From Leidyana gryllorum EB-2025a (taxonomy: Eukaryota > Protista > Apicomplexa), in assembly GCA_048772705.1 (NCBI GenBank), contig JBLWGC010000061.1, positions 13,304 through 77,303 of the forward strand: 64,000 nt of DNA. The letters run 5' to 3'. The notes below the pieces were generated by a model that saw only the letters and a list, made by a program, of their open reading frames with translations, ran no database searches and was not told where the DNA came from. The first letter of the stretch is position 1. Every line of letters begins with the position of its first letter. Below, piece by piece: positions 1 through 64,000 of this stretch. A program made the translations under genes and the position numbers.

Positions 1-36
1 GATGAGATAGAGCGTCGGGTCAACCGGCAACCAACG

Positions 37-108
37 GGGCTGTTCTGGGAATCGAACCCAGGACTCCTTCCACCCTAAGGAAGGATCATACCACTAGACC
101 AAACAGCC
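37..108 (-). tRNA. tRNA-Pro(AGG)
   Basis: GGCTGTTTGGTCTAGTGGTATGA..TT-AGG-GT..TTCGATT..AACAGCCC. Confidence 0.9.
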
Positions 109-196
109 GCCTGTCGGTCGTGCAACCCGCTAGGTACACTCGAGAGAGTGGTCATACTACGTGAAGTACCACTCAATGCGATGGGGTCTGCACAGC

Positions 197-269
197 GGGG
201 GACTAGCTCAAATAGTAGAGCGCTCGCTTAGCATGCGAGAGGTACTGGGATCAATGCCCAGGTCGTCCA
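197..269 (+). tRNA. tRNA-Ala(AGC), several substitutions
   Basis: CTCGC-TT-AGC-AT-GCGAG; D-loop, acceptor and T-loop variants. Confidence 0.7.
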
Positions 270-386
270 AAGTACGTACGGCAGCACGGGGCGGGAGCCA
301 AACCCAACCTTACATCTTTGAAGGGTCGCAGACCACAAGTGCCATTGCGAGAGCAGCGCAGTCAATGTTTAGGGTGCCTCTGAAAG

Positions 387-459
387 CGGTCCTGGCAGGT
401 TTCGAACCTGCGACTTTGTGGTTAACAGCCACACGCTCTGCCGACTGAGCTACAAGACC
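387..459 (-). tRNA. tRNA-Asn(GTT)
   Basis: TGTGG-CT-GTT-AA-CCACA; intact cloverleaf. Confidence 0.9.
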
Positions 460-576
460 CAGCTACAATAGTTCAGAGGTTAGTATAGAGATCCTCCTTT
501 TTCTACCACAAGATTCTGCAACCACGTCTTGTCAAGAGGGTACGGCTCTCGGCTAAAGCTGCAGCTGAGGGAGTTG

Positions 577-649
577 TCCACTGTAGTCTAAGTGGCTAGG
601 ATATGCGGCTCTCACCCGCATGACCCGGGTTCAAGTCCCGGCAGTGGAA
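577..649 (+). tRNA. tRNA-Glu(CTC)
   Basis: TGCGG-CT-CTC-AC-CCGCA; intact. Confidence 0.9.
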
Positions 650-726
650 ATATTGCTGAACACGCCACGGACATTCGTTCAGAAAACGGCCGTTACCGTG
701 TACGAGCTTCAACAACAAGGTGTCAC

Positions 727-797
727 GCATCTGTGGTCTAGTGGTAGAATGTCTCGTTGCCATCGAGACGACCCGGGTTCGATTCCCGGCAGATGCA
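727..797 (+). tRNA. tRNA-Gly(GCC)
   Basis: TCTCG-TT-GCC-AT-CGAGA; intact. Confidence 0.9.
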
Positions 798-872
798 GAG
801 CACACATGGTTGCTTTTCCACCATTCAGAAATTCATGCGTGAGTTGGTGTTCAACCCTCCAACCACATCGCA

Positions 873-954
873 CGACAACTGCTGGATTTGAACCAGCGCG
901 GGCCCGGCCCAGTAGATTTCTAGTCTAACCCCTTAACCACTCGGGCAAGTTGCC
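873..954 (-). tRNA. tRNA-Ser(AGA)
   Basis: TAGA-CT-AGA-AA-TCTA; long variable arm; 82 nt. Confidence 0.85.
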
Positions 955-1016
955 GCAGTCGAACTTGGCATTTGGCGGCCAGTGGCTTCAAATACGGTTC
1001 AGCAAGCTTTACTAGG

Positions 1017-1088
1017 ACTGCTCGCGGCGCCCGAACCCGCGGTTCTAACTTCAAAAGTCTTGCGCTCTACCGACGGAGTTGGGGCGGC
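1017..1088 (-). pseudogene. Degenerate tRNA-Lys (recurrent pseudogene family)
   Basis: 5' half matches Lys at 3081-3153; anticodon and T arms broken. Confidence 0.75.
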
Positions 1089-1186
1089 CAGAAAGCTCGG
1101 ACTCGGTAACAAATTCCAGTCGTATTGATGGTGGAATCTTTCCGAGACAGTTCGGCTCTCGGCCGAAGCCTAAACTCGAGCACTTG

Positions 1187-1259
1187 TCCACTGTAGTCTA
1201 AGTGGCTAGGATATGCGGCTCTCACCCGCAAGCTCCGGGCTCAAGTCCCGGCAGTGGAA
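1187..1259 (+). tRNA. tRNA-Glu(CTC), T-loop variant
   Basis: Glu body; GGGCTCAAG B-box variant. Confidence 0.65.
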
Positions 1260-1348
1260 GTCAGTGGTTGAAGTCAGTGGAATACTTGAGCAAAGTGCTC
1301 CAGTAATCCCCGTCAATAGTCACTGATTCGTGATCTTCGGCCTGCATT

Positions 1349-1420
1349 GCCTTCTTAGCTCAGGGGCAGAGCATTCGCTTAGTAAGCGAAAGGTCGCCGG
1401 TTCGTTTCCGGCAGAAGACT
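1349..1420 (+). tRNA. tRNA-Thr(AGT), mutated
   Basis: TTCGC-TT-AGT-AA-GCGAA; T-loop and acceptor substitutions. Confidence 0.65.
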
Positions 1421-1619
1421 TGACTGCATCGACTGGGCACCTGCAAAGCTTAAAGTCTCTCAAGCTCCAATCATCGTAGCTGAGCCTCGTAGCTCAGCCA
1501 GCAGAGGGTAAGTCTCGTAGCCACAAAGTCGCAGACTGGAACCTGCCAGTACCTGAGGCACCCACTAGCTCAAGGCAAACTGCGGCCGGGTCTCGGGGTG
1601 CTGAAGCTCTTTCTCAAGT

Positions 1620-2776: not shown

Positions 2777-2849
2777 CGGTCCTGGCAGGTTTCGAACCTG
2801 CGACTTTGTGGTTAACAGCCACACGCTCTGCCGACTGAGCTACAAGACT
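2777..2849 (-). tRNA. tRNA-Asn(GTT)
   Basis: Intact except G1>A. Confidence 0.78.
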
Positions 2850-2960
2850 CAGCTACAATGTTTCAGAGGTTGGTAGAGAGACCCTCCTCTTTCTACCGCA
2901 GGATTCTGCAACCTTGCAAGAGGGTACGGCTCTCGGCGAAAGCTGCAGCTGAGGGAGTTG

Positions 2961-4750: not shown

Positions 4751-5352
4751 TGTTGTAACCCCAAGTCGCTACTCAAGGGGAACGAGGCCCAGTTCTCATC
4801 TCTGCATACTTTCGACCACAAGTCAGACTTAGAACCAAGTTAATATTTTTGCCGACAAGTCTACCACGAATATGTCGCACACGACGGCGCAAAACAAGAA
4901 CCACGACTTGTTGTACCAAGTGCAAAAGTTATCTTAGGCCGCCTCTTGCCTAGTCCAACTCTGACTTAGCCAACTTTGCTTGCGTGTGTCCCTCACTCTG
5001 GTGTCTCTCTCACTCTACCCATGTGTCAGTCGCTCGCACTCTTGCGGAGCCTCGCGCTGGACACACACGGTAGTTCTCCCCGACACCACACTCTGATCAT
5101 TCATGCGAGTGTCTGCACAGTTACACTGTCACAGAGAGTTCAGACCGCTAGGGTGCATGAGCCTTTACGCTTTAGTAGTAGTTGCTTTACGTTGGTTAAT
5201 AATGCCTTTTCACCATCTTATACATGCCCCTATATAAGTGCCAAATATGTAGGGAAGTATCCAGATGGATGTTAATTCGATTGGAAATTTCACCAAGTCG
5301 AATTTGGCAACCCGATAGGAAGTTGACCATCAGGCAAACACGAACTACAACA
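4751..5352. mobile_element. Solo LTR (602 bp), Ty1/copia-like termini
   Basis: Starts TGTTGTA, ends TACAACA (7-bp terminal IR); GTGGC direct repeat at 4746-4750 and 5353-5357; TATATAA at ~5231; absent from homologous spacers at ~12790, ~28290, ~50800. Confidence 0.9.
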
Positions 5353-7640: not shown

Positions 7641-7848
7641 CACTCCGAGCACGCCGGCCTCCAACCCCAAAAGTCCTTTCATTTTGAGATTCCAAGGATA
7701 GAAAACGCGTGGAGCGGCGAGCCAACAACGCCCCGTGAACATGGCCGAGTGGTCTAAGGCGCTGTGCGCACACCGGAGTCCGAGAGGGCGTGGGTTCGAA
7801 TCCCACTTTTGTCAGGTTACGCCCTAAACGGGAAAAACATAGTCTGAG

Positions 7849-7920
7849 TGGGCCCAGAGTGATTTGAACACACAACCTTCTGATCTGAAGTCAGACGCGC
7901 TACCGTTGCGCCATAGGCCC
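7849..7920 (-). tRNA. tRNA-Trp body with TCA (opal) anticodon
   Basis: TCTGA-CT-TCA-GA-TCAGA; acceptor GGGCCTA/TGGGCCC; one T-stem mismatch. Confidence 0.7.
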
Positions 7921-43338: not shown

Positions 43339-43411
43339 GACGCCCTAGCTCAGTCGGTAGAGCGCAAGACTCTTAATCTTGCGGTCGCGGGTTCGAGCCC
43401 CGCAGGCGGTG
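43339..43411 (+). tRNA. tRNA-Lys(CTT) variant
   Basis: Acceptor substitutions. Confidence 0.7.
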
Positions 43412-43467
43412 TGGATCTTTTTCCCTGGAAGTAAGGAACTGTTGCCTACAAGCACATTCAGCAATAT

Positions 43468-43540
43468 TTCCACTGCCGGGACTTGAACCCGGGTCATGCG
43501 GGTGAGAGCCGCATATCCTAGCCACTTAGACTACAGTGGA
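43468..43540 (-). tRNA. tRNA-Glu(CTC)
   Basis: Intact. Confidence 0.9.
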
Positions 43541-43657
43541 CAACTCCCTCAGCTGCAGCTTTAGCCGAGAGCCGTACCCTCTTGACAAGACGTGGTTGCA
43601 GAATCTTGCGGTAGAAAAAGGAGGATCTCTATACTAACCTCTGAACTATTGTAGCTG

Positions 43658-43730
43658 GGTCTTGTAGCTCAGTCGGCAGAGCGTGTGGCTGTTAACCACA
43701 AAGTCGCAGGTTCGAAACCTGCCAGGACCG
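43658..43730 (+). tRNA. tRNA-Asn(GTT)
   Basis: Intact. Confidence 0.9.
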
Positions 43731-45015
43731 GATTCGGAGGCACCCTAGACAATGACTGCGCTGCTCTCGCAATGGCACTTGTGGTCTGCGACCCTTCAAA
43801 GATGTAAGGTTGGGTTTGGCTCCCGTCCCGTGCTGCCGTACGTACTTTGAACGACCTGGGCATCGATCGTAGTACCTCTCGCACACTAAGCGAGCGCTTC
43901 ACCATTTGAGCTAGTCCCCCGCTGTGCAGTAGTGGTACTTCACATAGTATGACCACTCTCTCGAGTGTACCCAGCGGGTTGCACGACCGACAGGTGGCTG
44001 TTTGGTCTAGTGGTATGATCCTTCGTTACCGTGGAAGGAGTCCTGGGCTCGATTCCCAGAACAGCCCTCTTGGTTGTCGGTTGACCCGACGCTCCACCTC
44101 CTTTCAATATGAAACGGCTCTCATCTGAAGCCTCAACTCGGGAAATAGTCCACTGTAGGCTGAGTGGTTAGGATATGCGGCTGTCACCCGCACGATCCGG
44201 GTTCAAGTCCCGGCAGTGGAAGTCATTGGACTGCTCGAGCAAAGTGCTCCAGTAATCCCCGTCAAAAGTGACTGATTCGTGATCTTCGGCTTGCATTGCC
44301 TTCTTAGCTTGGGGCAGAGCATTCGCTTAGTAAGCGAAAGGTCGCCGGTTCGATTGCGGCAGAAGGCTTTGCTCACGAGCTTAAGCTTTTCTGGCTGGTC
44401 TTTCAGTCTCGATAACGACCTGAGAGGGTTGCAAAATTTATCAGCTTCGAGTTTGGGTAAGACGAACCGTAGACTATTCGATGCAGGTAGTAGAGTCGGC
44501 TGCTCTGCCTGCGGGGTTACAGGCTGGCACACTCAGGCGCGACATTCGATTCCCGGTCTCGGAGCAGTTCCAGCCCTCACAACTGGTGCAACTCAGATTT
44601 TGTCTCAGCTGGTCTGGACTTCATTCGGGATTGTACGAGTGGGAGCCGCGTATAGTAGCCGACCTTGGAGAGACGTGGCATTGAACCCAGGACTTCTTCC
44701 AGCCGAAGAAAGAATCATATAACTAGACCAAACAGCCCCCTGTGGGTGCCTCAGGTACTGGCAGGTTCTAAACCTGCGACTTCGTGGCTGAGAGACTTAC
44801 CTCTGATGGCTGAGCTACGATTATTGGAGTTTGCGAGCAGCTTGCCGGTGCCCAGTCGATGCAGTCGAGCCTTCAGCCGGAATCGAACCGGCGACTTCTC
44901 GCTTACGAAGCGAACGCTCTGCCCCTAAACTAAGAAGGCAATGGAAGCCGGAGATGACGAAACAATCGCTATTGACGGAGATTAGTGGAGCACTTTGCTA
45001 GAGTAGTTCAATGAC

Positions 45016-45088
45016 TTCCACTGCCGGGACTTGAACCCGGATCGTGCGGGTGAAAGCCGCATATCCTAGCCACTTAGACTACAGTGGA
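45016..45088 (-). tRNA. tRNA-Glu(TTC)
   Basis: Intact. Confidence 0.9.
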
Positions 45089-45963
45089 CGAGTGGTTGAG
45101 TTGGGGCTTCGGCCGAGAGCCGTACCGTCTTGGAAAACATGGTATGTCGGCGTGATCAAGTGAGTGGATCTCTCATACAGATTCGGACTTAGTAACCAAT
45201 TCCATTTGTATTGATCGTGGAATCTTGGGCCTTCCTCGGGTACGGGGCGAGCTTCCTTGCCGCCCCAACTCCGTCCGTAGAGCGCCAGACTTTTGAAGGG
45301 AGAACCGCGGCTTCCCGCCGCGCGAGCAGTCCTAGTCAAGCTTGCTGAACCGTATGTGAAGCCACAGGGCGCACCAGTTCCTCACTCGGGCAAGTTGGCA
45401 ACTGTCGATTCCGTCATGTGGCGAGCAGTGGGCTCACATACGGCCACGATAAGTGCTTATTTTCACCGCCTTCCATGACTACCTACCGCCTCGGTAGCTG
45501 AGTTGGGAGAGCGCCAGACTGAAGATCTGGAAGTCCCGTGTTCGATCCACGACCGAGGCAGAGAGGTTGTGACATTTGGTGTCATTCCTCGCACCCATCA
45601 GATACCTGTTTCCAGAGACACACGCCGCTTTCACAGTCCGGAAGCCCCGTGCAGCCATGGTCTAGTGCTTACGACGTCTGCTTAACACGCAGAAGTTCCC
45701 GAGTTCGATCGTCGGTGGCTGTAGATCGCAACTTTCAGCGAGAATCTCAAGCGAAACCAACTGTGCTCCGAGACCGGGAATCGAACCCGGGTCTTCCGCG
45801 TGACAGGCGGAAATACTAACCACTATACTACCTCGGACGCTCCGATCACGCCGGCCTCCAACCCCAAAGTTGGCCGAGTTGTCTAAGGCGCTCTGCTCAG
45901 ACCGCAGTCCGAAAGGGCGAGGATCTGGTGTTGAGCCTTTCGAACCCCGGAGCAGTTGGACGG

Positions 45964-46043
45964 CCGGGGGTAGCTCAGTTGGTAGAGCACCTGACTGTAG
46001 TGCTGGCATGAGATAGTCGGCGGTTCGATTCCGCCCCACCGGA
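45964..46043 (+). pseudogene. tRNA-Tyr(GTA) with intron, anticodon stem disrupted
   Basis: CCTGA..ATGAGA mismatches. Confidence 0.7.
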
Positions 46044-46474
46044 AGTAGAGGGGTCATCGGCAAACTACTACTCACACTGATGGACAGCGTTGATAGCAAC
46101 TAGACTACTCCGGCGAGGCTTCCATCTATGTAGTTCGGATGGGCTGGGAATCCATCCCAGAACCTTTCGTATACTAAGCCACCGTTTCATCATCTGGGCT
46201 AGCCTCCTATGCCTACCTCATGGCATTGAGTGATACTTCACATAGTGATACGAGTCTCTCGACTGTACCGCCAGGCTTCGAAACTGCGACTTTGTGGTGA
46301 ACAGCTACACGCTTTGCCGACTGAGCTACAAGACCCAGTTGCAATTTCTTCTAAGCGAGAAAAATCATACCTTCAGACCAAACAGCCTCCTGGTCGGCCT
46401 GCCCGGCTAGGGCACTCATAGGTGTCAAATGCTGGAGTACTCGGCGGTCGCGTTCGGCTGTCATTGGGTTGATT

Positions 46475-46548
46475 TGCTCCCCGGGGGGATCGAACCCTCG
46501 ACCTTCGGCACATAAGGCCGATGCTCTAACCAGCTGAGCTAGGGGAGC
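46475..46548 (-). tRNA. tRNA-Ile(TAT), intronless
   Basis: Same as 21934-22007. Confidence 0.85.
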
Positions 46549-46638
46549 GATCACCGCCGTTCCACCGCGTAACTCACATTCAATTCTATCTCAGGCAACG
46601 GAAGCCGTTTGCACGCTGAAACTCAGAAGGGAAGTAAC

Positions 46639-46722
46639 GCACAGATGCCCGAGTGGTCTAAGGGGCCAGACTCAAGTTCTGGTAGGCGCAAGTCTGCATG
46701 GGTTCGAATCCCATTCTGTGCA
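46639..46722 (+). tRNA. tRNA-Leu(CAA)
   Basis: Intact. Confidence 0.9.
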
Positions 46723-47458
46723 ACGGCGATCATTACCAAAAATAGGCTGGAAAAGGCCACAGTAGATTCGAGTCTCCATCCGTATATCCGGTTGCATGCA
46801 CCGAAGTATTCGGCTGTTGTTGTGGATCCTTCCTTGGGGTGGAAGGAGTCCTGGGTTCGATTCCCAGAACAGCCCTCTTGGTCGTCGGTTGACCCGACGG
46901 GACAAGTTGCCCTCAGAACCAACACAGCATTTCATTAGCCCACTTCGGTAGGGCAGTCAGGGCAACTAACATCTGGAGAATTGCATTTCGGCTATTTCTT
47001 CCATGTTGCAGACTGAGCAATGTAGCTCAGTGAAAAGTGTTGAGCTCATAATCCAAAGGTCGTGTCGGGAATCGAATCCAGGTCGGGAGATTCAAAATCT
47101 CCACAGCTGACCACTGTGCCGTAGGGGGGCAGGCTGAACAGGCGGCTGTCTGGTCTGGTGGTATGATTCTTCCTCGGGTGGAAGAACATTGTAATTGGGT
47201 CTTGTAGCTCAATCGGCAGAGCGTGTGGCTGTTAACCACAAAGTCGCAGGTTCGAAACCTGCCAGGACCGGGTGATGCGGCACCGTACTCTCTAGACGGC
47301 ACTTGTGCTCTTGGAACCCCTTTCCAAGGTCGTAGACTTAGCCGAAATGCGATTCTCTAGATGTTAGTTGCCCTGACTGCCCTACCGAGGTGGGCTAACG
47401 AGGTGGCTGTGTTGGTTGTGAGGGCAACTTGTCCCGTCGGGTCAACCGACGACCAAGA

Positions 47459-47530
47459 GGGCTGTTCTGGGAATCGAACCCAGGACTCCTTCCACCCTAA
47501 GGAAGGATCATACCACTAGACCAAACAGCC
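47459..47530 (-). tRNA. tRNA-Pro(AGG)
   Basis: Intact. Confidence 0.9.
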
Positions 47531-47780
47531 GACTGATCGGTGGTGCAAATTGCTGGTAGAGTCGGGAGACTGGTCATAACATGTCAAGAACCACTAAATG
47601 CTATGGGGTGTGCACAGCCGGCGACTAGCTCAAATTATGTAGCACTCGCGTAGCAGGCGAGAGATGCTGGGATCGATGCCCAGGTCGTCCAAACTCCATG
47701 CAACTTTGGCTGCAGAGAAACGGCTGGCGGGTGGTCCAAAAACGTGAATGTTGTTATTTCAATCTAGTCGAAAAGCCGCC

Positions 47781-47853
47781 GCCTACGTGGCGCAATGGAT
47801 AGCGCGTTGGACTTCTAATCCAAAGGTTGCGAGTTCGAGTCTCGCCGTAGGTA
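47781..47853 (+). tRNA. tRNA-Arg(TCT)
   Basis: Intact. Confidence 0.9.
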
Positions 47854-48240
47854 GCCAAATGCTCAGCACTTTACTTCGATGATTTGGCTGACTAGCTGCC
47901 TTCGCCGTGGAATGTTGCCCACTGTAGTCTGAGTGGCTAGGATATGCGGCCTCACCCGCAAGCTCCGCGCTCAAGTCCGGCAGTGGAAGTCAGTGGCTGA
48001 AGTCAGTGGAATACTTGAGCAAAGTGCCCAGCAATCTCCGTCAATAGTGTCTGATTCGTGATCTTCGCCTTGCATTGCCTTCTTAGCTTAGGGGCAGAGC
48101 ATTCGCTTAGTAAGCGAGAGGTCGCCAGTTCGATTCCGGCAGAAGGCTCGACTGCATCGACTGGGCACCTGCAAGCGGTAAGTCTCTTAGCCACGAAGCC
48201 GCAGGTTTGGAACCTGCCAGTACCTGAGGCACCCACAGGG

Positions 48241-49431
48241 GGCTGTTTGGTCTAGTGGTATGATTCTTCGTTCGGGTGGAAGAAGTCCTGGGTTCGACTC
48301 CCAGAACAGCCCGTCTGATAGTTGTTGACGCAACACGGCACTCGCCCCATCCCGAGACAATGTCCCTGACAGCTAAGACAGGATCTGAGTTGTTGACTCA
48401 ACAGGCTACAACCCGACCATTCACCCAGACGCTACTGGGACTCGAACCCAGAATCCCCGGTTCCGTAGACCGATGCCATATCCATTAGGCCATAGCGCCG
48501 ACTAACGGAGCCGTCAAATGGAAGTGTGTAGCGATCCAGAGAGGACATGGGCAGCTACGCCCGATCGTGGGTTTGGACAGGCTTCATTTACATCTCCCAT
48601 TCGAGACATCGGTGGACATACTATCCAAGCCAGGATTCGTGCCTGGGTATGCACGGCCACAACTTGCTGTTGTAAGCACTAGACGACCCGGACGATCTTC
48701 AAGTATGTCGGCGTGACCAAGTGAGTGGATCTCTGATACAAATTCGGACTTAGTAACCAATTCCATTTGTATTGATCGTGGAATCCTGTGCCTTCCTCGG
48801 GTACGGGGCGAGCTTCCTTGCCGCCCCAACTCCGTCGGTAGAGCGCAAGACTTTTGAAGGGAGAACCGCGGGTTCGGGCGGCGCGAGCAGTCCTAGCAAA
48901 GCTCGCTGAATCGTATGTGAAGCCACTGGCCGCAAAATGCCAAGTTCGACAGCGGCAACTTGCCCGAGTGGTTACGGGGGTAGACTAGAAATCTACTGGG
49001 CATGGCCCGCGCTGGTTCAGATCCAGCAGTTGTCGTGCGATGTGATTGGAGGGGTCAGACACCAACTCAAGCGTGAATCCCTGGAATGGTGGGAAAACAA
49101 TCATGTGTCTTCTGCATCTGCCGGGAATCGAGCCCGGGTCGTCTCGATGGCAACGAGACATTCTACCACTAGACCACAGATGCACAATATCTTATTGAGC
49201 TAGTCGCCTGCTGTGCAGACCTCATACCATTCCGCGGTTTTCGCCCCTCATCAGATACCTGTTTCCAGAGACACACGCCCCTTTCACAGTCCGAAAGCTC
49301 CGTGCAGCCATGGTCTACCGGTTACGACGTCTGCTTCACACGCAGAAGGTCGCGAGTTCGATCCTCGGTGGCTGTAGCTCGCAACTTTATCTGAGCACCA
49401 CGAAATCTGAAGCGGAAAAACGAACTGTGCT
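48241..49431 (+). repeat. ~1.2-kb direct duplication (partner 17130-18320)
   Basis: Offset 31111, near-identical. Confidence 0.92.
48427..48499 (-). tRNA. tRNA-Arg(ACG)
   Basis: Intact. Confidence 0.9.
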
Positions 49432-49683
49432 CGAGTGCCATTAGCGTCTGTCTCAGTTGTCTGGACTTCATGCGGGATTGTACGAGTGAGAGCCGCATAT
49501 CTTAGCCGACCTTGGAGAGACGTGATGTGAGTCAACAACTGTCAGACGGGCTGTTCTGGGAATCGAACCCAGGACTCCTTCCACTCTAAGGAAGGACCAT
49601 ACTACTAGACCAAACAGCCGCCTCTCGGTCGTGCAAACCGCTGAGGACACTTGAGAAAGTGACACCAAATGTCACACCGTCTC

Positions 49684-49756
49684 TGCCTCGGCCGTGGATC
49701 GAACACGGGACTTCCAGATCTTCAGTCTGGCGCTCTCCCAACCGAGCTACCGAGGC
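49684..49756 (-). tRNA. tRNA-Phe(GAA)
   Basis: One D-loop change. Confidence 0.82.
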
Positions 49757-50144
49757 GGTAGGTAGCTACGGAAGGCGATGAAAATAAGCACTTACCGCGG
49801 CCGTATGTGGGGCCACTCCTCGCCGCATGGCGAAATCGACAGTAGCCAACTTGCCCGAGTGGGGAAGGGGGGTAGATTGGAATTCGTGCGTAAGTTGGTG
49901 TCTGACCCCTCCAATCACATCGCACGACAACTGCTGGATCTGCACCAGCGCGCCCAGTTGAATTCTGTGGTGGAAATGATGCTATTCCCAGCATCAAACC
50001 CTCATATGGATCGAGACAGGGAGTGCCTTTTCAGCTTAGGGGCAGAGCATTCGCTTAGTAAGCGATGGGTCGCCGGTTTGATTTCGGCAGAAGGCTTTGC
50101 TCACGACCCGATAATTCTATAACTGTTTCCCTCCTGCGCACACT

Positions 50145-50216
50145 TAGCAGTGCGTCGTTTCGATCGACGGACCTTAGGGTTATGAGCCCAACACTCTTCC
50201 ACTGAGCTACACTGCT
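50145..50216 (-). tRNA. Initiator tRNA-Met(CAT)
   Basis: One anticodon-stem mismatch. Confidence 0.8.
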
Positions 50217-50497
50217 CAGTCTACAACATGGAAAAGGGAGCCGAAATGCGATTCTTGAGATGTTAATGGCCTTGAGTGCCGAAGTGGGCTAACGAGGTGG
50301 CTGTGTTTTTGGAGCACAGTTGATTCCGCTTAAGATTGTCTCCTTTGGTTCTCGCTGAAAGTTGCGAGCTACAGCCACCGAGGATCGAACTCGGGACCTT
50401 CTGCGTGTGAAGCAGACGTCATAACCACTGCTGCACGGCAGGTCCCGCAGACCAAAGCAAGTGGGGAGGTTTCACGAAGTAGTGAGGACTAGTTTCA

Positions 50498-50569
50498 AGG
50501 TCGCGCCGGGAATCGAACCCAGGTCGGGAGATTCAAAGTCTCCAGTGCTAACCACTACACCACGCAACC
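50498..50569 (-). tRNA. tRNA-Gln(TTG)
   Basis: Intact. Confidence 0.9.
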
Positions 50570-51403
50570 GATTTAGCCCTTCTCAAAGAGTTGATAGAGC
50601 CATCCGGACTAGAGCTTCCCCACACATGCAAAACGGGTTTTTCTACTAACCTCCAAAATATTCAACTGGCTCTTGTAGCGCAGTGGGCAAAGCGTGTGAT
50701 TGTTAAATACTAAGTCGCAGGTGCGCGGTCTCAGGCACCCTAGACCGTATTGCGATGCCAAAGTCTATCCAAGGGCTACAGGGCACAATCAAAGGCTCTC
50801 AACTCGGTGAATACATAGCGGCAGGTGCAGCCGTACGAAGTTTGGACGACCTGGACATCGATCCCATACCTTTCGCATGCTAAGCGAGCGCTCTACCATC
50901 TGAGCCAGTCGCCCGACGTGCAGTCCCCATCGCATTTATCGGTTGTCAACATAGCATGACCACTCTCTCGACTCTACCCGCGGATTGCACCACCGACCAG
51001 GCAGCTGTTTGGTCTAGTGGTATGATCCTTCCTTAGGGTGGAAGGAGTGCTGGGTTCGATTCCCAGAACAGCCCGCTTTGTTGTATCTTGACCCAACCTG
51101 ACTGGCACCATGGTTCGGGGTTCGGGTGATTCTTCGGAGACAGTCGGGGGGGCGTGTAGCGCAGTCGGTAGCGCGTAGGTCTCATAATCCTGAAGTCGAG
51201 AGTTCGATCCTCTCCACTCCCAGGGTCGGAATCGAAATCGCCGACAAACTCATCATGCTATCGTTTTGCATCTGTCGGGAATCGCACACGGGTTATCTTG
51301 ATGGCAGCGAGAGACTCTTCCACTAGACCACAGATGCAGAACACGATCTTGTGAATCTTGTACGTGGTGACAGCCATTCCTCTTAAGCCTATCGATGCAA
51401 CAA

Positions 51404-51475
51404 AGCCTTCTGCCGGAATCGAACCGGCGACTTTTCGCTTACTAAGCGAATGCTCTGCCTCTAAGCTAAGAAGGC
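51404..51475 (-). tRNA. tRNA-Thr(AGT)
   Basis: Near-intact. Confidence 0.8.
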
Positions 51476-51551
51476 AATGCAAGCCGAAGATCACGAAACA
51501 GTCTCTATTGACGGAGATTACTGAACCACTTTGCTCGAGTAGTGCAAGGAC

Positions 51552-51624
51552 TTCCACTGCCGGGACTTGAACCCGGATCGTGCGGGTGAGAGCCGCATAT
51601 CCTAGCCACTTAGACTACAGTGGG
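51552..51624 (-). tRNA. tRNA-Glu(CTC)
   Basis: T1>C only. Confidence 0.8.
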
Positions 51625-52702
51625 CAAGTTCCCCAATTGAGGTTTCGGATGAGCACCGTACCCTCTTAACAACACGTGGTCCGTCGGGTCAACCTACAAC
51701 AAAGGGGTTGCAGTAGAAAGTGGAGGGTCTCTCCACTAAGCTCAGAAACATTGTAAGGGGTCTTGTAGCTCAGTCGGCAGAGCGTGTGGCTTTTGATGAC
51801 AAACTCGGAGGTCCGGAACCCAACAGAACCGGCTTCAGATGCACCCTAGACATTGAGTGCGGTGCTCTCCCAATGGCACTTGTGGTTCGCGACTCTTCAA
51901 AGATGGTAGCGATGGGTCTGAATGCGGCCACGTGCAGCCGTACGTACTTTGGACGACCTGGACATCGATCCCAGTACCTCGCGCATGCTAAGCGAGCGCT
52001 CTACCATTTGAGCTAGTCGCCCGTGGTGCAGACCCCATCGCATTTGTTGGTTCTCAACATAGGATGACCACTTTTTAAACTGTCTTCAGCGGGTTGCACG
52101 AACGACAGGCGGCTGTTTGGTGTAGTGGTATGATACTTCCGTCGGGTGGAAGAAGTCCTAGGTTCCATTCCCAGAACAGCCCGCTTTGTTGTATCTTGAC
52201 CCAACCTGCCTGGCAGCATGGTTCTGGGTTCAGGTGATTCCTCGGAGAAAGTCGGAGGGGGAGTGTAGCGCGTAGGTCTGATAATCCTGAAGTCGAGAGT
52301 TCGATCCTCTCCACTCCCACGGTCAGAATCGAAACCGCCGACAAACTCATCATGCTATCATTCTGCATCTGTCGGGAATCGCACACGGGTTATCTCGATG
52401 GCAGCGAGCGACTCTTCCACTAGACCCCAGATGCAGAACACGATTTGGTGAATCTTGTACGTGGTGACAGCCATTCCTCATAAGCTTATCGATGCATCAA
52501 AGCCTTCTGCCGGAATCGAACCGCCGACTTCTCGCTAAGCGAACGCTCTGCCCCTAAGCTAAGAAGGCCACTTAGCTGGAGAATCATGTGGCAGTTGTAT
52601 CGACAAAAGTTAACCGGGTGCCACGTGCACGGCGGGCTGTCCCGCGCGCGCATCGTGGGGGCATGCTGGGATGAAGTCGCAGGTTGTCCTGACTACAACG
52701 CC

Positions 52703-52782
52703 TGACAAGAGTGGGATTCGAACCCACGCCCTTTCGGACTGCGGCCTGAACACAGCGCCTTAGACCATTCGGCCATCTTGCC
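52703..52782 (-). tRNA. tRNA-Leu(CAG)
   Basis: Near-intact. Confidence 0.85.
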
Positions 52783-52942
52783 GCAGTCTTGTTGGTTCGT
52801 CGCTCCACGCGGTTTTTGTCCGTGAAGTTCTCGAGAAGGAAGACTTCTAGGGTTGAAGACGCGGAAGACGCGGGTTCGATGCCCTGTCTCGAAGACAGCA
52901 CGTTACCTCGCTTTGGGTGGAGCTCACTTCACATGTTCGAGC

Positions 52943-53015
52943 TACAGCCACCGAGGATCGAACTCGGGACCTTCTGCGTGTTAAGCAGACGTCGTAACCA
53001 CTAGACCATGGCTGC
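52943..53015 (-). tRNA. tRNA-Val(AAC)
   Basis: Intact. Confidence 0.9.
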
Positions 53016-53344
53016 ATGAAAGCTTTCCGCAGACCAAGAGAAGTTGCGAAGTTTCAATACGTAGTGATGACTAGTTGCGAGGTCGCGCCGGGAATCGAAC
53101 CCAGGTCGGGAGATTCAAAGTCTCCAGTGCTAACCACTACAACACGGAACCATTCACGACCAAGATTCAAAAGAGTGAGTGAAGCCATTGGGACTGGAAA
53201 TAAATGCGGTCAAGGGCTCGAATGTTTCCGTGCCATTGAGACGACCCGCGCTCGATACGAGGCGGCTTCAAATCTGGGTAAGTGCAAAAAGATCTCATCT
53301 CGAGATGGTACGGCTTTCGTCCAAAGCTGCAGCTGAAGAAGTTG

Positions 53345-53417
53345 TCCACTGTAGTCTAAGTGGCTAGGATATGCGGCTTTCACCCGCACGATCCGGGTTC
53401 AAGTCCCGGCAGTGGAA
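53345..53417 (+). tRNA. tRNA-Glu(TTC)
   Basis: Intact. Confidence 0.9.
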
Positions 53418-53745
53418 GTCATTTAAATACTCGAGCAAAGTGCTCCACTAATCTCCGTCGATAGCGCTTTTTCGTCATACCCGGCTTACATTGCCTTCTC
53501 AGCTTAGGGGCGGAGCGTTCGCTTCGTCAGCGACAAGTCGCCGGTTCGATTCCGGCAGAAGGCTTTGATGCATCGATAGGTTTAAGAGGAATGGCTGTCA
53601 CCACGCGCAAGATTCACAAGATCGTGTTCTGCATCTGTGGTCTAGTGGATGAGTCGCTCGCTGCCATCGAGATAACCTGTGTGCGATTCCCGACAGATGC
53701 AAAACGATAGCATGATGAGTTTGTCGGCGGTTTCGATTCCGACCG

Positions 53746-53818
53746 TGGGAGTGGAGAGGATCGAACTCTCGACTTCAGGATTATGAGACCTACGCGCTAC
53801 CGACTGCGCTACACTCCC
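53746..53818 (-). tRNA. tRNA-Met(CAT) elongator
   Basis: Intact. Confidence 0.9.
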
Positions 53819-53894
53819 CCTCCGACTTTCTCCGAGGAATCACCCGAATTCAGTACCATGCTGCCAGGCAGGTTGGGTCAAGATACAACAAAGC

Positions 53895-53966
53895 GGGCTG
53901 TTCTGGGAATCGAACCCAGCACTTCTTCCACCCAAAGGAAGAATCATACCACTAGACCAAACAGCC
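53895..53966 (-). tRNA. tRNA-Pro(TGG)
   Basis: CTTCC-TT-TGG-GT-GGAAG. Confidence 0.8.
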
Positions 53967-54423
53967 GACAACCCACCATCCCGGTACAGCCCCCAGTACT
54001 GTGGAAGCAGTCGGCACAGCACGCGTTTCGGCTCCCTCTTTCATGTTGGACACTGAGGAGCGTGGCTCAGTGGGAGAGTGTTGGGCTCATGACGGGAAGG
54101 TCCGTCGATCGAAACGACGCACTGCTAAGCGTCAGCAGGAGGACACACTTATAGAAATACTCCCCGATCTGGCTATCGACCCCCACACGTTTGGCGTGCA
54201 AAGTCACCTCTCTACCACTTGAAATAGCCGCCCACCCGCCAAACCCAAGTGAACTTTCCCCGCCTCGGTTCCTCAACAGTGGCACTTCGAGCTCTCAAGC
54301 TCAACACTGCGGCACAGATCGCCGGGTGGTCCGAGGTCCAAACTCGAATTTTGATGCCGCAAGTCTGCATGGCTCCGAATGTCAGCCACTCTTGTCGATT
54401 CCGCTGTAGAGCGAGACCACGAG

Positions 54424-54496
54424 AACGGTGGGCGGGACTCGAACCCACAACCTTTGCCTCCGGAGCGCAACACGCTATGCATTGCGCCACCACCGC
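54424..54496 (-). tRNA. tRNA-Arg(CCG), mutated, single copy seen
   Basis: TTGCG-CT-CCG-GA-GGCAA; acceptor GCGGTGG/CCACCGT. Confidence 0.68.
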
Positions 54497-54665
54497 ACAA
54501 TCCACAGCCTCACTGTCTGCGACGCCTGAGTCGTGATATCGCCTGGCACCGCTATTTCGATTAAGCAGTTGTCAAGTGGACGTGGTAGGCGGAGTTCGAA
54601 AGACTCCTTATCTTATTTGAGACAGGGGTTCAACTCTCCTAGACCCTCGTCAGAGCCTAGCAAAA

Positions 54666-54737
54666 GGGCTGTTCTGGGAATCGAACCCAGGACTCCTTCC
54701 ACCCTAAGGAAGGATCATACCACTAGACCAAACAGCC
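54666..54737 (-). tRNA. tRNA-Pro(AGG)
   Basis: Intact. Confidence 0.9.
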
Positions 54738-55333
54738 GACTGATCGGTGGTGCAAATTGCTGGTAGAGTCGGGAGACTGGTCATAACATGTCAAGAACCA
54801 CTAAATGCTATGGGGTCTGCACAGCGGGCGACTAGCTCAAATGATATAACACTCGCTTGACATGCGAGAAATACTTGGATCAATGCCCAGGTCGTCCAAG
54901 CTTCTAACGGCTGCTCCTCCGGTATCTGAAAACAGAGTCACGACCGAATGGAGTTGACGCCCGATCACATTACACGACAACTGCTGGATTCGAATCACCG
55001 CGAGCCAGACCCTTAATCACTCGGGCAAGTTGCCAACTGTTGAATTGGACATCCCGCGGGCAGTGACTCCACAGAGGGCTGCGGTGAGTGCCTATCTTCA
55101 CCGCGTTTCAAGGCTTTCTAGCGCCTCGGTAGCTCAGTTGGGAGAGCGCCAGACTGAAGATCTGGAAGTCCCGTGCTCGATCCACAGCCGAGGCAGAGAG
55201 GTTGTGGCATCTGGTGTCAAAATCCCTCGCGCCCGTGCGAGGGTTCTGCCCCTCAGCTAACCAGGCAGGCCCTGTCTCGATCACATAACGGTATGGCTGA
55301 GGCCAACACCTTCGAACGTTTCATTCCATCTTC

Positions 55334-55405
55334 AGGGCACGCGCGGAGTTGAACCACGGACTTGCTGATCTGCAGTCAGCTGCTCTACCACTGAGCTACG
55401 TACCC
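55334..55405 (-). tRNA. tRNA-Cys(GCA)
   Basis: Intact. Confidence 0.88.
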
Positions 55406-57094
55406 AGAACTGCCCCTCATACTCACTCAACTCGGTCCTGTCTCCTCACTTGAAGCAAAACCGCCGTGTACGTCGTGACCACTAGACCATAGCTGCACGG
55501 ATGGTCCCCGCAGCCCCAGAGGAGTGGCGAAGTTTCAGGGAGTACGGAGGACCAGTGCCAAGGTCGCGCCGGGAATCGAACCCAGGTCGGGAAATTCAAA
55601 GTCTCCAGTGCTAAGCACTACATCACGCAACCGGTTCAACCCATCCCAAAAGAGTCGGTACAGCCATCCGGACCAGCGCACCTTCCGTCGGGATTCCCGT
55701 GCGAACTGTCAGTGGTGTAGGTACACCCCCTTCTCGATGTCAGTATTTGGCTCTGGAATGACTGTTTGGCGGGGTGGACGACGGTCTGAGCGGCCGCTTC
55801 AATCCCAGTCATGGGGTTTTGCTGTGCACATCACTCGCTCCTTCGGCTAGTGACTGTTCACCTCAACTCTGAAGCGGTCACATATTCCAGTCGGTTAGAG
55901 CGTGAGCCTGATAACTTCCGAGTCCGCGACTGGAGCCCGCGCGTGACCAAGTGAGTGGATCTCTGATATAGATTCGCTCTGTGCCCGAGGAAGGCCCAAG
56001 ATTCCACGATCAATACGAATGGAATTTGTTACTAAGTCCGAGCTTCGTTGCCGCCCCAAGTCCGTCGGTAGAGCGCAAGACTTTCGAGGGGAGACCGCGG
56101 GTTTGGGCAGCGCGAGAACTCAAGCTTGCTGAACCGTATGTGAAACCATTGGCCGCAAAATGCCGAGTTCGACAGGTGGCAACTTGCCCGAGTGGTTGAG
56201 GGGGTAGACTAGAAATCTACTGGGCCTGGCCCGCGCTGGTTTAAATCCAGCAGTTGTCGTGGGATGTGGTGGAAATAATGCAATTCCCAGCATCAAAAAC
56301 TCATATGGGTCGAGACAGGGAATGCCTCCTTAGCTTAGGGGCAGAGCATTCGCTTTTTCAAGCGAAAGGTCGCTGGTTCGATTCCGACAGGAGGCTTCAG
56401 TCATCAGCCTAAACATGGTTGCGATCGGGCGTCAACTCCATTCGGTCGTGACTCTGTTTTCAGATACCGGAGGTGCAGCCAGTGGAAGTTTGGACGACCT
56501 GGGCATCGATCCCAGCATCTCTCGCCTGCTACGCGAGTGCTACATAATTTGAGCTAGTCGCCGGCTGTGCGGACCCCATCGCATTTGTTGGTTCTCAACA
56601 TAGGATGACCACTTTTTAAACTGTCTTCAGCGGGTTGCACGAATGACAGGCGGCTCTTTGGTCTAGTGGTATGATTCCTCCGTCGTGTGGCAGAAGTCCG
56701 GGGTTCCATTCCCAGAACAGCCCGCGTTGTTGTATCTTGACCCAATTCCTCGGAGAAAGTCGGAGGGGAGTGTAGCGCAGTCAGAAATCGCACACAGGTT
56801 ATCTCGATGGCAACGAGCGACTCTTCCTCTACACCACAGATGCAGAACACGATCTTGTGAATCATTCCTCAAAAGCCTATCGATGCATCAAAGCCTTCTG
56901 CCGGAATCGAACCGGCGACTGCTCGCTTTTGAAGCGAACGCTCTGCCCCTAAGCTAGGAAGGCAACTTAGTTGGGGACTCATGTGTCAGTTGTATCGACA
57001 AAAATTAGCCGGGTGCTACCTGCACGGCGGGCAGTCCCGCGCATGGTGCGGGGATGCTGGGATGCAAGTCGCAGGTTGTCCTGACTACAACGGC

Positions 57095-61125: not shown

Positions 61126-61198
61126 AGACGCTACTGGGACTCGAACCCAGAATCCCCGGTTCCGTAGACCGATGCCATATCCATTAGGCCATAGCGCC
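61126..61198 (-). tRNA. tRNA-Arg(ACG)
   Basis: Intact. Confidence 0.9.
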
Positions 61199-61730
61199 GG
61201 CAAGGGTTTTTTATTCGAGACTGCCGGGACTCGAACCCGGGCTCCAAGCATGGGAAGCTCGCATCCTACCCTTGGACTTCTACCCGAGACTCGGGCGGAG
61301 TTTGCGTTGAGCTTGTGGGTGCGTCACACTACTGCAGGTTCCAAACCTGCGACTGTGTGGCTAGAAGACTTATCCTCTGCCCACGGAGCTAACAGACTCA
61401 GCTAGGCTGATTGGAGCTCGAAACACTCAAGCTTTGTAGCTTCCCAGTCGATGCAGTCCAGCCTTCTGCCGCAATCGAACCAGCGACCTTTCGCTTACAA
61501 AGCGAATGCTCTGCCTCTAAGCTAAGAAGGCTTCCCCTGTGTCGATCCATATGAGGGTTTGATGCTGGAAATAGCATCAGCTCAACCACAGGATTCATGC
61601 GTAAGTTGGTGTCTGACCCCTCCAATCATATCGCACGACAACTGCTGGATCTGCACTAGTTCCTCACTCGGGCAAGTTAGCAACTGTCGATTCCGTCATG
61701 TGGCGAGGAGTGGCCCCACACCTGAAGATT

Positions 61731-61802
61731 GTCCGAATCGTCTAGTGGTTAGGACAGCACGTTGTGGCCGTGCAAACCCAGGCTCGATTCCTGGCTCGGA
61801 CA
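61731..61802 (+). tRNA. tRNA-His(GTG)
   Basis: His body; T-loop CTCGATT. Confidence 0.75.
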
Positions 61803-62265
61803 GTATGTCTCTGGATTCTCGGATGGGAACTCTTGCCGGATCGACAACGCTTGATCCCAACACACTCTCATTTGACGCCCCCGTTGATCGGCGGTATGGC
61901 CCAATGGATGTGGCGTCGGTCCACGGAACTGGGGATTGTGGGCTCGAGTCCCAGTAGCGTCTGGGCGAGTGGTCGGGTTTTAGCCCCTCACAACTGATGC
62001 AAATCAGATTTTGTCTCAGCTGTCTAGACTTCATGCGGGATTGTACGGGGTAAGAGCCGCATATCTTAGCCGACCTTGGAGAGACGCGGAGTGAGACAAC
62101 AATTGTAAGACGTGCTGTTCTGGAAATCGAGCCCAGACTCCTTCCACCCAAGGAAGGAACATACTAGACCAAACAGCCGAACGGATGGTGGTGCAACTAT
62201 GCTATGAAGAATCACGAAATGCTGTGGCGTCTGCACACCGAGCGACTAGCGCAACAAGTTATTAC

Positions 62266-62336
62266 GCATCTGTGGTCTAGTGGTAGAATGTCTCGTTGTC
62301 ATCGAGACGACCCGGGTTCGATTCCCGGCAGATGCA
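62266..62336 (+). tRNA. tRNA-Gly body with GTC (Asp) anticodon
   Basis: Single GCC>GTC change in otherwise consensus Gly. Confidence 0.78.
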
Positions 62337-62521
62337 CAGGAGATGGCACCTGGTTGATTGTGCCACGCCAGGCCCATTCTAGTCTACCCCCTTAACCACT
62401 CGGGCAAGTTGCCACCTGTCGAACTCGGCATTTTGCGGCCAGTGATGTCACATACGGTTAAGCAAGCTTGACTAGGACCCCAAACCGTTGTGAAAAGTGC
62501 CAGCGAGTAAGAGATGTCGTC

Positions 62522-62603
62522 GGCAAGGTGGCCGAGTGGTTAAGGCGGCGGCCTGCTAAGCCGTTGGGTGCCACCCGCGTGAGTTCGAATCTCACCCTTG
62601 TCG
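62522..62603 (+). tRNA. tRNA-Ser(GCT)
   Basis: Intact. Confidence 0.86.
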
Positions 62604-62894
62604 GTAGCATTCGGGGAGAGCGCAACTGGTTGAATGATTGAACTGAGGTTTTTGCCCGACTCGAATCCAATTCTTGACGCTGGGGTCTGTATACAAGACC
62701 CGTGTTGCATGTGTCCAGTTGAGGAAGCGCCAGTCCGACTCTTCTGGGATGGGCTGAACCGGTTGCGTCCTTGGTGGTTAGCACTCGACACTTTGGATTT
62801 TGCGACCTGGGTTCGATCCCGGCGCGACCCTTGAACTGGTCCTCACTACTCCCTGAAGCTTCGCCACTTCTCTTGGGCTGCGGGGACCATCCAT

Positions 62895-62967
62895 GCAGCC
62901 ATGGTCTAGTGGTTACGACGTCTGCTTAACACGCAGAAGGTCCCGAGTTCGATCCTCGGTGGCTGTA
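62895..62967 (+). tRNA. tRNA-Val(AAC)
   Basis: Intact. Confidence 0.9.
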
Positions 62968-63022
62968 GCTCGCAACTTTCAGCGGGCACCAAAAAAGACA
63001 ATCTTAAGCGAGATCAATTGTG

Positions 63023-63094
63023 CTCCGAGACCGGGAATCGAACCCGGGTCTTCCGCGTGACAGGCGGAAATACTAACCACTATACTATCTCGGA
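63023..63094 (-). tRNA. tRNA-Asp(GTC)
   Basis: Intact. Confidence 0.9.
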
Positions 63095-63304
63095 CGCTCC
63101 GAACACACCGGCCTGAAACCCCAAAAGTCCTTCCATCTTGAGATTCCAGGGATAGAACACGCGTGGAGCGGCGAGCCAACAAAATCCCGGCAAGATGACC
63201 GGGTGGTCTGAGGCGCTGTGCTCAGACCGGAGTCCGAAAGGTCGTGGGTTCGAATCCCACTTTTGTCAGGTTGCGTCCCAAACGGGAAAAACATAGAGTC
63301 CGGT

Positions 63305-63376
63305 TGAGCCCAGAGTGATTCGAACACCCAACCTTCTGATCTGGAGTCAGACGCGCTACCGTGGCGCCATAGGCCC
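63305..63376 (-). tRNA. tRNA-Trp(CCA)
   Basis: One D-loop change. Confidence 0.8.
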
Positions 63377-63549
63377 AAAACCATCCCCCGTTCCAGACTC
63401 ATTTACCGGCAATCGGGCCTGCTTCTTAGGCCTGACATGCGAAAATAGTAACCACTATGCTATCTCGGACGCTCTGAACACGCCACGGACATTCCATTCG
63501 TTCAGAAAACGGCCGTTACCGTGTACGAGCTTCAACAACAAGGTGTCAC

Positions 63550-63620
63550 GCATCTGTGGTCTAGTGGTAGAATGTCTCGTTGCCATCGAGACGACCCGGG
63601 CTCGATTCCCGGCAGATGCA
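63550..63620 (+). tRNA. tRNA-Gly(GCC), T-loop variant
   Basis: GGGCTCGATT. Confidence 0.72.
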
Positions 63621-63697
63621 GAAGACACATGATTGTTTTCCCACCATTCCAGGGATTCACGCTTGAGTTGGTGTCTGACCCCTCCAATCACATCGCA

Positions 63698-63779
63698 CGA
63701 CAACTGCTGGATCTGAACCAGCGCGGGCCATGCCCAGTAGATTTCTAGTCTACCCCCGTAACCACTCGGGCAAGTTGCC
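63698..63779 (-). tRNA. tRNA-Ser(AGA) variant
   Basis: Copy of the 48954-49035 variant. Confidence 0.62.
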
Positions 63780-64000
63780 GCTGTCGAACTTGGCATTTTG
63801 CGGCCAGTGGCTTCACATACGATTCAGCGAGCTTTGCTAGGACTGCTCGCGCCGCCCGAACCCGCGGTTCTCCCTTCAAAAGTCTTGCGCTCTACCGACG
63901 GAGTTGGGGCGGCAAGGAAGCTCGCCCCGTACCCGAGGAAGGCACAGGATTCCACGATCAATACAAATGGAATTGGTTACTAAGTCCGAATTTGTATCAG

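What the first reader, a model, noticed from the sequence alone, without database searches (positions are those of the whole stretch)
1..64000. Combinatorially shuffled tRNA array covering all 20 amino acids plus iMet
Seen: at least 64 kb with no genes other than tRNA-derived units at ~150-200 bp spacing on both strands. All 20 amino acids and iMet are present, and most synonymous isoacceptors occur (no intact Leu TAA/TAG, Ser CGA, Gly TCC or Sec found). There is no single repeat unit; a limited set of gene+flank modules recurs in different orders and orientations. Known: eukaryotic tandem tRNA arrays such as those of Entamoeba, or Arabidopsis Ser-Tyr clusters, are homogeneous repeats of a few tRNAs. 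Inference: this is a higher-order, aperiodic 'tRNA satellite' turned over by recombination. It may work as a chromatin or structural domain (dense TFIIIC/condensin sites, centromeric or subtelomeric) or as a tRNA reservoir, rather than just supplying gene dosage.
Basis: partly seen in the sequence, partly recalled or inferred. Interest (0 to 1): 0.9.

Follow-up and report, generated by a model that had tools for sequence, protein, structure and literature searches.

The report
Scrambled megabase tRNA field in gregarine
A gut parasite related to the malaria agent appears to keep all its transfer-RNA genes as about 10,000 working and decaying copies in scrambled fields filling roughly a tenth of its genome assembly, reshuffled partly by recombination through the genes themselves and mostly lacking the usual transcription stop signal.

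Summary
Real. The window holds 418 tRNA-derived units (267 ARAGORN calls, 105 structurally undamaged, all 20 amino acids plus iMet) at a median 148 bp, on both strands, plus one solo LTR. The genome is a 15.5 Mb gregarine (actin 88% to Gregarina niphandrodes). The field spans about 96 contigs, 1.4-2.2 Mb, roughly 9,000-14,000 units; haplotype redundancy may inflate this. Order is locally fixed (blocks of 2-6 genes), aperiodic at long range; 91% of neighbour pairs recur on other contigs, so local order is not misassembly. Some shuffling runs through tRNA bodies: breakpoints are enriched at gene ends, an inversion switches inside tRNA-Ala, five chimeric tRNAs cross over in register. Single copies decay near-neutrally, yet consensus bodies stay perfect and copy number tracks amino-acid usage; no Trp, His or Ile copy was seen outside the field. 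It is probably the cell's tRNA source, in birth-and-death. Oligo-T terminators are missing, though U6 and 5S keep theirs. The field holds U6 genes, touches rDNA once and borders chromovirus belts; a centromeric role is open. The scan already noted this field on other contigs of this genome. Closest known: Entamoeba arrays, which are homogeneous.

The parts
1..64000 (.). Continuous field of 418 tRNA-derived units (336 full length, 105 undamaged) from 28 body families; part of contig C61 (77,303 bp), which is field from end to end
4751..5352 (.). Solo LTR (TG...CA ends, 5-bp target duplication at 4746-4750 and 5353-5357); other copies at different sites in C217, C129, C43, C138
19255..19328 (+). 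In-register chimeric tRNA, 5' half Ala, 3' half Thr; second copy on C4
31062..31136 (-). In-register chimeric tRNA, Ala body switching to Pro at the T arm (B box); second copy on C212
38213..42177 (.). 4-kb block duplicated in inverted orientation at 56489-60455 (98.5%); one end lies at the 3' end of a tRNA-Ala
43271..56611 (.). Segment recopied at 99.1-99.8% in C61:1-11.8 kb (left of the window), with the inner 49426-56611 part inverted
47620..47695 (+). Degenerate tRNA-Ala body, identical to the inverted one near 56489-56560 despite different flanks; the copy left of the window switches from one flank to the other inside this body
7848..7920 (-). tRNA-Trp body with UCA anticodon and 3 differences from consensus; one of 11 near-intact anticodon-switched copies in the window

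Best explanation
This is the gregarine's tRNA gene set, amplified about 200-fold into one or a few repeat fields that evolve by birth and death. Shown: blocks of 0.5-6 kb are duplicated in either orientation. About a quarter of new junctions fall at the far end of a tRNA body shared by both partners (twice the chance rate), and a few fall in register between different tRNAs at the conserved A/B boxes; the other three quarters lie in spacers or mid-gene. The order is therefore a walk through a fixed graph of gene-flank modules: locally conserved, globally aperiodic. Shown: single copies mutate near-neutrally and leave fossil slots, while family consensus bodies stay perfect. Inferred: purifying selection acts on the pool, not on each copy, helped by gene conversion among bodies. 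Inferred: the undamaged third supplies the cell's tRNA through individual Pol III promoters and, lacking oligo-T, ends by read-through to a distant T run or by a fail-safe route, with RNase P/Z trimming. Inferred: the field lies in gene-free, chromovirus-bordered chromatin where expansion is tolerated; a high RNA demand on one haploid nucleus in a very large cell (own knowledge of gregarines) may have started the amplification.
For: Breakpoints: 15 of 57 true ends of recent duplicates at a shared gene end against about 12% expected, p=0.003; 4.5-fold peak of alignment ends at the distal gene boundary; Ala-body switch and five chimera types. Near-neutral copies: stem-breaking, invariant and anticodon changes at observed/expected 0.9-1.5; gene and spacer divergence equal in >=97% pairs (0.9 vs 1.0%) but 5.6 vs 10.6% in older pairs. 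Pool constraint: a relative's contig has 100% identical Ala, Lys, Val and Glu bodies with unrelated spacers. Supply role: all 70 exact Trp hits, and the listed His and Ile hits, lie in field contigs; copies per amino acid track usage, Spearman 0.77 on 3,572 codons; shortest spacers are 87 bp head-to-head, 55 tandem, 34 tail-to-tail, as upstream TFIIIB footprints would require (post hoc Fisher p=0.02). Terminators: T>=4 within 45 nt after 15% of intact genes, the same as upstream; 2 Ile-AAT genes genome-wide within 18 nt; U6 and 5S end in T6 and T4.
Against: No RNA data: transcription of the field is not shown (one search found no RNA holder). Near-neutral decay means far more copies exist than supply needs, so supply does not explain the size. 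Three quarters of junctions are not at gene ends. Median spacer lengths do not differ by orientation. The His and Ile lists were truncated at 100 rows, and diverged dispersed tRNA genes could escape the patterns. The codon sample is small and actin-heavy.
Confidence: 0.6

Rival explanations
1. The field is kept mainly as a chromosome-structural domain: the centromere or pericentromere (or chromosome end), built of TFIIIC/condensin-binding tDNA, and tRNA supply is a by-product. Not exclusive with the best explanation.
For: On C43 the order is field (0-137 kb, interleaved with Ty3/gypsy from 68 kb), then a retrotransposon belt with a chromodomain at 152 kb, then non-repeat DNA with long reading frames by about 275 kb. 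C71 and C62 also pass from field to gypsy belt. Unit spacing of 148 bp is close to nucleosome core length. Fission-yeast centromeres are the densest tDNA regions, carry 5S genes and rearrange at tDNA clusters (10.1101/2022.12.06.519325); Entamoeba arrays cap one end of each chromosome (10.64898/2026.07.06.736064).
Against: Only one of the large contigs examined joins the field; B boxes mutate at the average rate, so TFIIIC sites are not individually protected; no canonical telomere array is in the assembly to test position.
Confidence: 0.25
2. Selection for gene dosage alone keeps thousands of copies.
For: Copy number tracks amino-acid usage; about 2,300-3,600 undamaged genes by extrapolation; U6 and rDNA are linked to the field.
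Against: Two thirds of full-length copies are damaged and damage accumulates at the neutral rate; fossil slots are copied along with live genes.
Confidence: 0.1
3. Assembly artefact: the order is mis-joined, or the size is inflated because a mixed parasite population contributes several haplotypes.
For: Field contigs are short (1-90 kb); 40% of the window has a >=99% copy in a 180-kb sample, and C212 looks like a rearranged allele of the window. No reads could be laid.
Against: 91% of the window's neighbour pairs have a full-span homologue on another contig, median best identity 97%; near-identical blocks differ by real substitutions (161 in 26.7 kb); a relative shows the same mixed layout. 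Mis-joining of local order is unlikely; size inflation by a factor of two or more is possible (about one in three), but C43 alone carries 137 kb.
Confidence: 0.04
4. A tRNA-derived SINE or a recombinase-driven cassette system produced the field.
For: Two tyrosine-recombinase-like reading frames lie in field contigs (C157 intact, C138 broken).
Against: All 29 families take part, flanks are inherited in blocks, there are no tails or target duplications and no common site at junctions; the recombinase elements are rare.
Confidence: 0.01

Closest known systems
Entamoeba tRNA gene arrays (PMC2652664; 10.64898/2026.07.06.736064)
   Same: Nearly all tRNA genes in arrays, thousands of copies (about 4,500), over 10% of a small parasite genome; some units carry 5S or snRNA.
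   Different: Entamoeba has 25-28 homogeneous arrays of 1-5 genes with short tandem repeats, no clear pseudogenes and no link to codon usage. Here all families are mixed in one aperiodic field, two thirds of copies are damaged, there are no short tandem repeats, copy number follows amino-acid usage and terminators are absent.
Fission-yeast centromeric tDNA and 5S clusters (10.1101/2022.12.06.519325)
   Same: Mixed-isotype clusters in both orientations next to LTRs, with rearrangements at tDNA clusters.
   Different: 96 centromeric tRNA genes in S. osmophilus against about 10,000 units here; the clusters there are syntenic across species; centromere identity is untested here.
Compact mixed tRNA clusters of other eukaryotes (animal-type contig L191)
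   Same: 26 genes of many isotypes in 4.5 kb on both strands, similar spacing.
   Different: Every gene there has T>=4 within 35 nt; no relics or block duplications were seen in it.
Other gregarine assemblies (PMC9250747, Table 1)
   Same: G. niphandrodes draft lists 231 tRNA genes, well above Plasmodium and Cryptosporidium (45 each).
   Different: No array is described. Porospora lists only 14, too few to read the code, which suggests (inference) tRNA genes lost in unassembled repeats.

Membership tests
Entamoeba-type tRNA arrays | Most tRNA genes in arrays making about 10% of the genome | tested here: met
   1.4-2.2 Mb of 15.5 Mb; Trp, His, Ile hits confined to field contigs
Entamoeba-type tRNA arrays | Homogeneous tandem unit of 1-5 genes | tested here: not met
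   No period; 190 adjacency types in the sample; both orientations
Entamoeba-type tRNA arrays | Short tandem repeats in spacers; no pseudogenes | tested here: not met
   TRF finds two trivial repeats; 231 of 336 full-length units damaged
Entamoeba-type tRNA arrays | Position at chromosome ends | tested here: inconclusive
   No canonical telomere array in the assembly; field contigs mostly unanchored
Centromeric tDNA cluster (fission yeast type) | Next to LTR retroelements in gene-free DNA | tested here: met
   C43, C71, C62 edges; chromodomain hit E=3e-9
Centromeric tDNA cluster (fission yeast type) | CENP-A core and H3K9me flanks, one per chromosome | not testable with these tools
   No chromatin or Hi-C data; one junction to a long arm found
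Satellite DNA with higher-order repeats | Tandem monomer with fixed period | tested here: not met
Pol III type-2 tRNA gene | Internal A and B boxes, cloverleaf | tested here: met
   29 consensus bodies pair correctly; Rfam up to 73.6 bits
Pol III type-2 tRNA gene | Oligo-T terminator close to the 3' end | tested here: not met
   15% with T>=4 in 45 nt (upstream control 13%); median distance to the first T4 is 320 nt
tRNA-derived SINE | Single master head, tail and target-site duplication, dispersed insertion | tested here: not met
   Block inheritance of flanks, all families

The most novel reading that the evidence does not exclude
Gregarines have gathered their Pol III genes (all tRNAs, most U6, with 5S/rDNA at the edge) into a self-shuffling megabase organiser that also serves as the centromere or main heterochromatin domain, and whose tRNA genes are expressed without oligo-T terminators as read-through precursors. 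That would be a centromeric satellite whose monomers are functional tRNA genes.
Probability: 0.25. Interest if true: 0.92.

Novelty: new variant of a known kind. Interest (0 to 1): 0.76.

Why it matters
Apicomplexans are known for minimal, single-copy tRNA sets (45 genes in Plasmodium and Cryptosporidium). A relative with about 10,000 tRNA-derived units in a tenth of its assembly is far outside that, and the layout differs from the only comparable case, Entamoeba. The field records its own recombination history, so it is a natural test of whether tRNA genes act as rearrangement hot spots and of how selection on a pool keeps genes intact while single copies decay. The genome-wide loss of tRNA terminators, with U6 and 5S keeping theirs, makes non-canonical Pol III termination directly testable. 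Gregarine centromeres are unknown to me, and this is a concrete candidate.

Tried and rejected
So no read support, depth or expression. The look-up of sequencing runs found no holder above 0.06. The rRNA family search failed and a 10-kb self search was not scored. Scaling from the Ile pattern (7.3 Mb) was rejected: Ile-rich modules are unevenly spread. Spurious-ORF searches for relatives' arrays gave only unrelated tRNA clusters. The recombinase had no homologue. No paper on gregarine tRNA arrays turned up in five searches. Upstream TATA-like bias: none. Conserved 5' flank sequence: none. UGA recoding by the Trp-UCA copy: not supported, it is one of many anticodon mutants. tRNA-Sec was not located.
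Full report
Observation. The window is a continuous field of tRNA-derived units. ARAGORN genes and Rfam 257. Clustering 816 calls from 209 kb of field gave 29 body families; searching with them finds 418 units in the window, 336 full length, covering 44.5% of the DNA at a median spacing of 148 bp with both strands about equal. 105 copies have no stem-breaking, invariant-base or anticodon change and no indel, and they cover all 20 amino acids plus initiator Met. GC is flat at 52-56%, and the ORFs are read-throughs of tRNA sequence. The one foreign element is a solo LTR at 4751-5352 with a 5-bp target duplication.

Organism and extent. The window is the right 64 kb of contig C61 of a 15.5 Mb, 237-contig assembly. 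One actin is 88% identical to Gregarina niphandrodes and 87% to Blabericola migrator, so this is a gregarine apicomplexan. Exact His, Trp and Ile patterns hit 112, 70 and 162 places (Ile with up to two mismatches). The contigs they and related searches mark are 95 short ones of 1-90 kb totalling 2.15 Mb, plus the first 137 kb of C43. Probes show most are field throughout. Scaling from His and Trp density gives 1.4-1.8 Mb. That is 9-14% of the assembly, 9,000-14,000 units and about 2,300-3,600 undamaged genes. A mixed parasite population could inflate this: 40% of the window has a >=99% copy in my 180-kb sample. None of the listed hits lies on another large contig; the Trp list is complete, His and Ile are cut at 100 rows.

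Order. There is no period. There are only 116 neighbour types in the window against 311 for shuffled order; 72% of triplets recur, 18% of 8-unit runs, no 30-unit run. Each family has 1-10 kinds of 5' and 3' flank. 91% of the window's neighbour pairs, spacer included, have a full-span homologue on another contig, at a median best identity of 97%. Local order is therefore biological. Long-range order could not be checked with reads.

How it shuffles. Shared blocks of 300 bp or more are direct and inverted equally often (537 and 569). Blocks at >=99% identity have a median length of 1.75 kb and hold 161 substitutions in 26.7 kb, so roughly one junction or larger indel arises per 10-15 substitutions. 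Alignment ends peak 4.5-fold at the far boundary of a tRNA gene. Among 57 true breakpoints of recent duplicates, 15 sit there with new flanks on both sides, against about 12% expected (p=0.003). One case is explicit: C61:1-11.8 kb copies window 43.3-56.6 kb, follows the flank of the Ala relic at 47.6 kb and leaves it on the flank of the inverted Ala relic at 56.5 kb; the two relic bodies are identical while their flanks are not. Five kinds of chimeric tRNA (Ala/Thr, Ala/Pro, Thr/Leu, Glu/Asp, Gln/Gly) cross over in register, mostly in the T arm. The other 42 breakpoints lie in spacers or mid-gene and look like deletions or short-homology joins. Recombination through tRNA bodies is thus one shown route, not the only one.

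Selection. Recent duplicates diverge equally in genes and spacers (0.9 and 1.0%), older ones half as fast in genes (5.6 and 10.6%). Damaging changes occur at about the neutral share (observed/expected 0.9-1.1, anticodon up to 1.5), and fixed fossil slots travel with live genes. Yet 19% of full-length copies equal the consensus, and a metagenome contig of a relative has identical Ala, Lys, Val and Glu bodies, the same mixed layout with relics, and unrelated spacers. Near-intact copies per amino acid correlate with usage in 3,572 codons of this genome (Spearman 0.77). The shortest spacers between live genes are 87 bp head-to-head, 55 in tandem and 34 tail-to-tail, the ladder expected if each gene needs room upstream for TFIIIB and little downstream; this is suggestive only (post hoc p=0.02, medians not different). 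I infer selection on the pool, with the field as the tRNA source.

Terminators. Earlier scan notes on other contigs pointed to this and I tested it. Only 15% of intact genes have four or more T within 45 nt, the same as upstream; the median distance to the first T4 is 320 nt; genome-wide only two Ile-AAT genes have T4 within 18 nt. U6 and 5S in the same genome end in T6 and T4, and an unrelated animal-type cluster has T runs after 26 of 26 genes. In yeast T-tracts are necessary but are helped by RNA structure and Sen1 (10.1101/2021.08.27.457903). Read-through to distant T runs with RNase P/Z trimming is the simplest reading; it is untested.

Surroundings. Seven U6 genes lie in the field, one about 700 bp left of the window, and one diverged copy lies outside it. 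On C157 the field runs into 5S, LSU, 5.8S and a truncated SSU, then a 2.8-kb element with 316-bp inverted ends and a tyrosine-recombinase-like frame, then field again; the other two rDNA contigs show no tRNA in the parts read. On C43 the field is interleaved with Ty3/gypsy DNA from 68 kb, ends at 137 kb, and is followed by a retrotransposon belt with a chromodomain at 152 kb and then non-repeat DNA. C71 and C62 also pass into gypsy belts. This resembles pericentromeric DNA, but the number of loci is unknown and telomere repeats are absent from the assembly.

Comparison. [quoted passage not shown] Fission-yeast centromeres hold mixed tDNA clusters that mark rearrangements, at about 100 genes (10.1101/2022.12.06.519325). 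The field works like both in part and belongs to neither. Published gregarine drafts list 231 and 14 tRNA genes without comment (PMC9250747). My paper searches found no description of this layout; the library lacks most subscription journals.

The feature is real, large and unusual. Best reading (0.6): a run-away, self-shuffling birth-and-death field that is the cell's tRNA source. A centromeric role is the main open addition (0.25). The scan has noted the same field on other contigs of this genome; new here are the breakpoint and chimera evidence, the selection tests, the spacer ladder, the contig map and the relative with the same layout. New variant of a known kind; interest 0.76.

Noticed in passing
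G000:C157:9432-12270 (L018:9432-10000 + L086:1-2270); broken relative at C138:54.8-55.6 kb (L125): 2.8-kb element with 316-bp terminal inverted repeats and one 730-codon frame with a weak tyrosine-recombinase match (Pfam PF00589, E=0.0012, below cut-off); joins a truncated SSU rDNA to the tRNA field; no homologue found. Both copies lie in field contigs.
   Followed up: partly
L002:2509-2612 (about 700 bp left of the window), L013:6211-6314, L121: U6 snRNA genes inside the field (7 copies, T6 end) and a diverged copy with a different 5' stem on C159 (T4 end).
   Followed up: partly
L084 (G000:C73:2000-6300): rDNA unit carries 5S on the opposite strand; an internal inversion places two SSU-5.8S-partial LSU copies head-on. 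Only three contigs carry this rDNA end, so the rDNA is probably collapsed.
   Followed up: no
window 5228-5318; L084:3494-3584; L085:514-606: A 90-bp stretch near one end of the solo LTR is 80-85% alike to the rDNA spacer just upstream of 5S.
   Followed up: no
window 7848-7920, 25056-25127, 34474-34546, 44149-44221, 62266-62336 and six more: Near-intact tRNA bodies with switched anticodons (Trp body reading UGA, Thr reading Ile, Glu reading Lys or Asp, Gly reading Asp); would mistranslate if expressed.
   Followed up: partly
L124 (metagenome contig Ga0116230_10145542, 1,975 bp): Relative with identical tRNA bodies, mixed orientation, relics and unrelated spacers; T4 follows Glu at about +22 but not Ala, Tyr, Lys or Val.
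   Followed up: yes
L191, L193 (contigs filed in a bacterial MAG): Animal-type eukaryotic cluster of 26 intact tRNA genes in 4.5 kb, all with terminators; a contaminant of the MAG, not a close relative.
   Followed up: partly
tRNA-Tyr family, e.g. window 3906-3985: Very short (7-nt) intron; acceptor stem has a G-A mismatch at pair 5-68 in the family consensus, shared with the relative's copy.
   Followed up: no
G000:C12:6956-6973: Only match in the assembly to three telomere-type units; canonical telomere arrays are absent or unassembled.
   Followed up: no
PMC9250747 Table 1: Porospora assemblies list 14 tRNA genes, too few for translation; their tRNA genes may sit in similar unassembled fields.
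   Followed up: no
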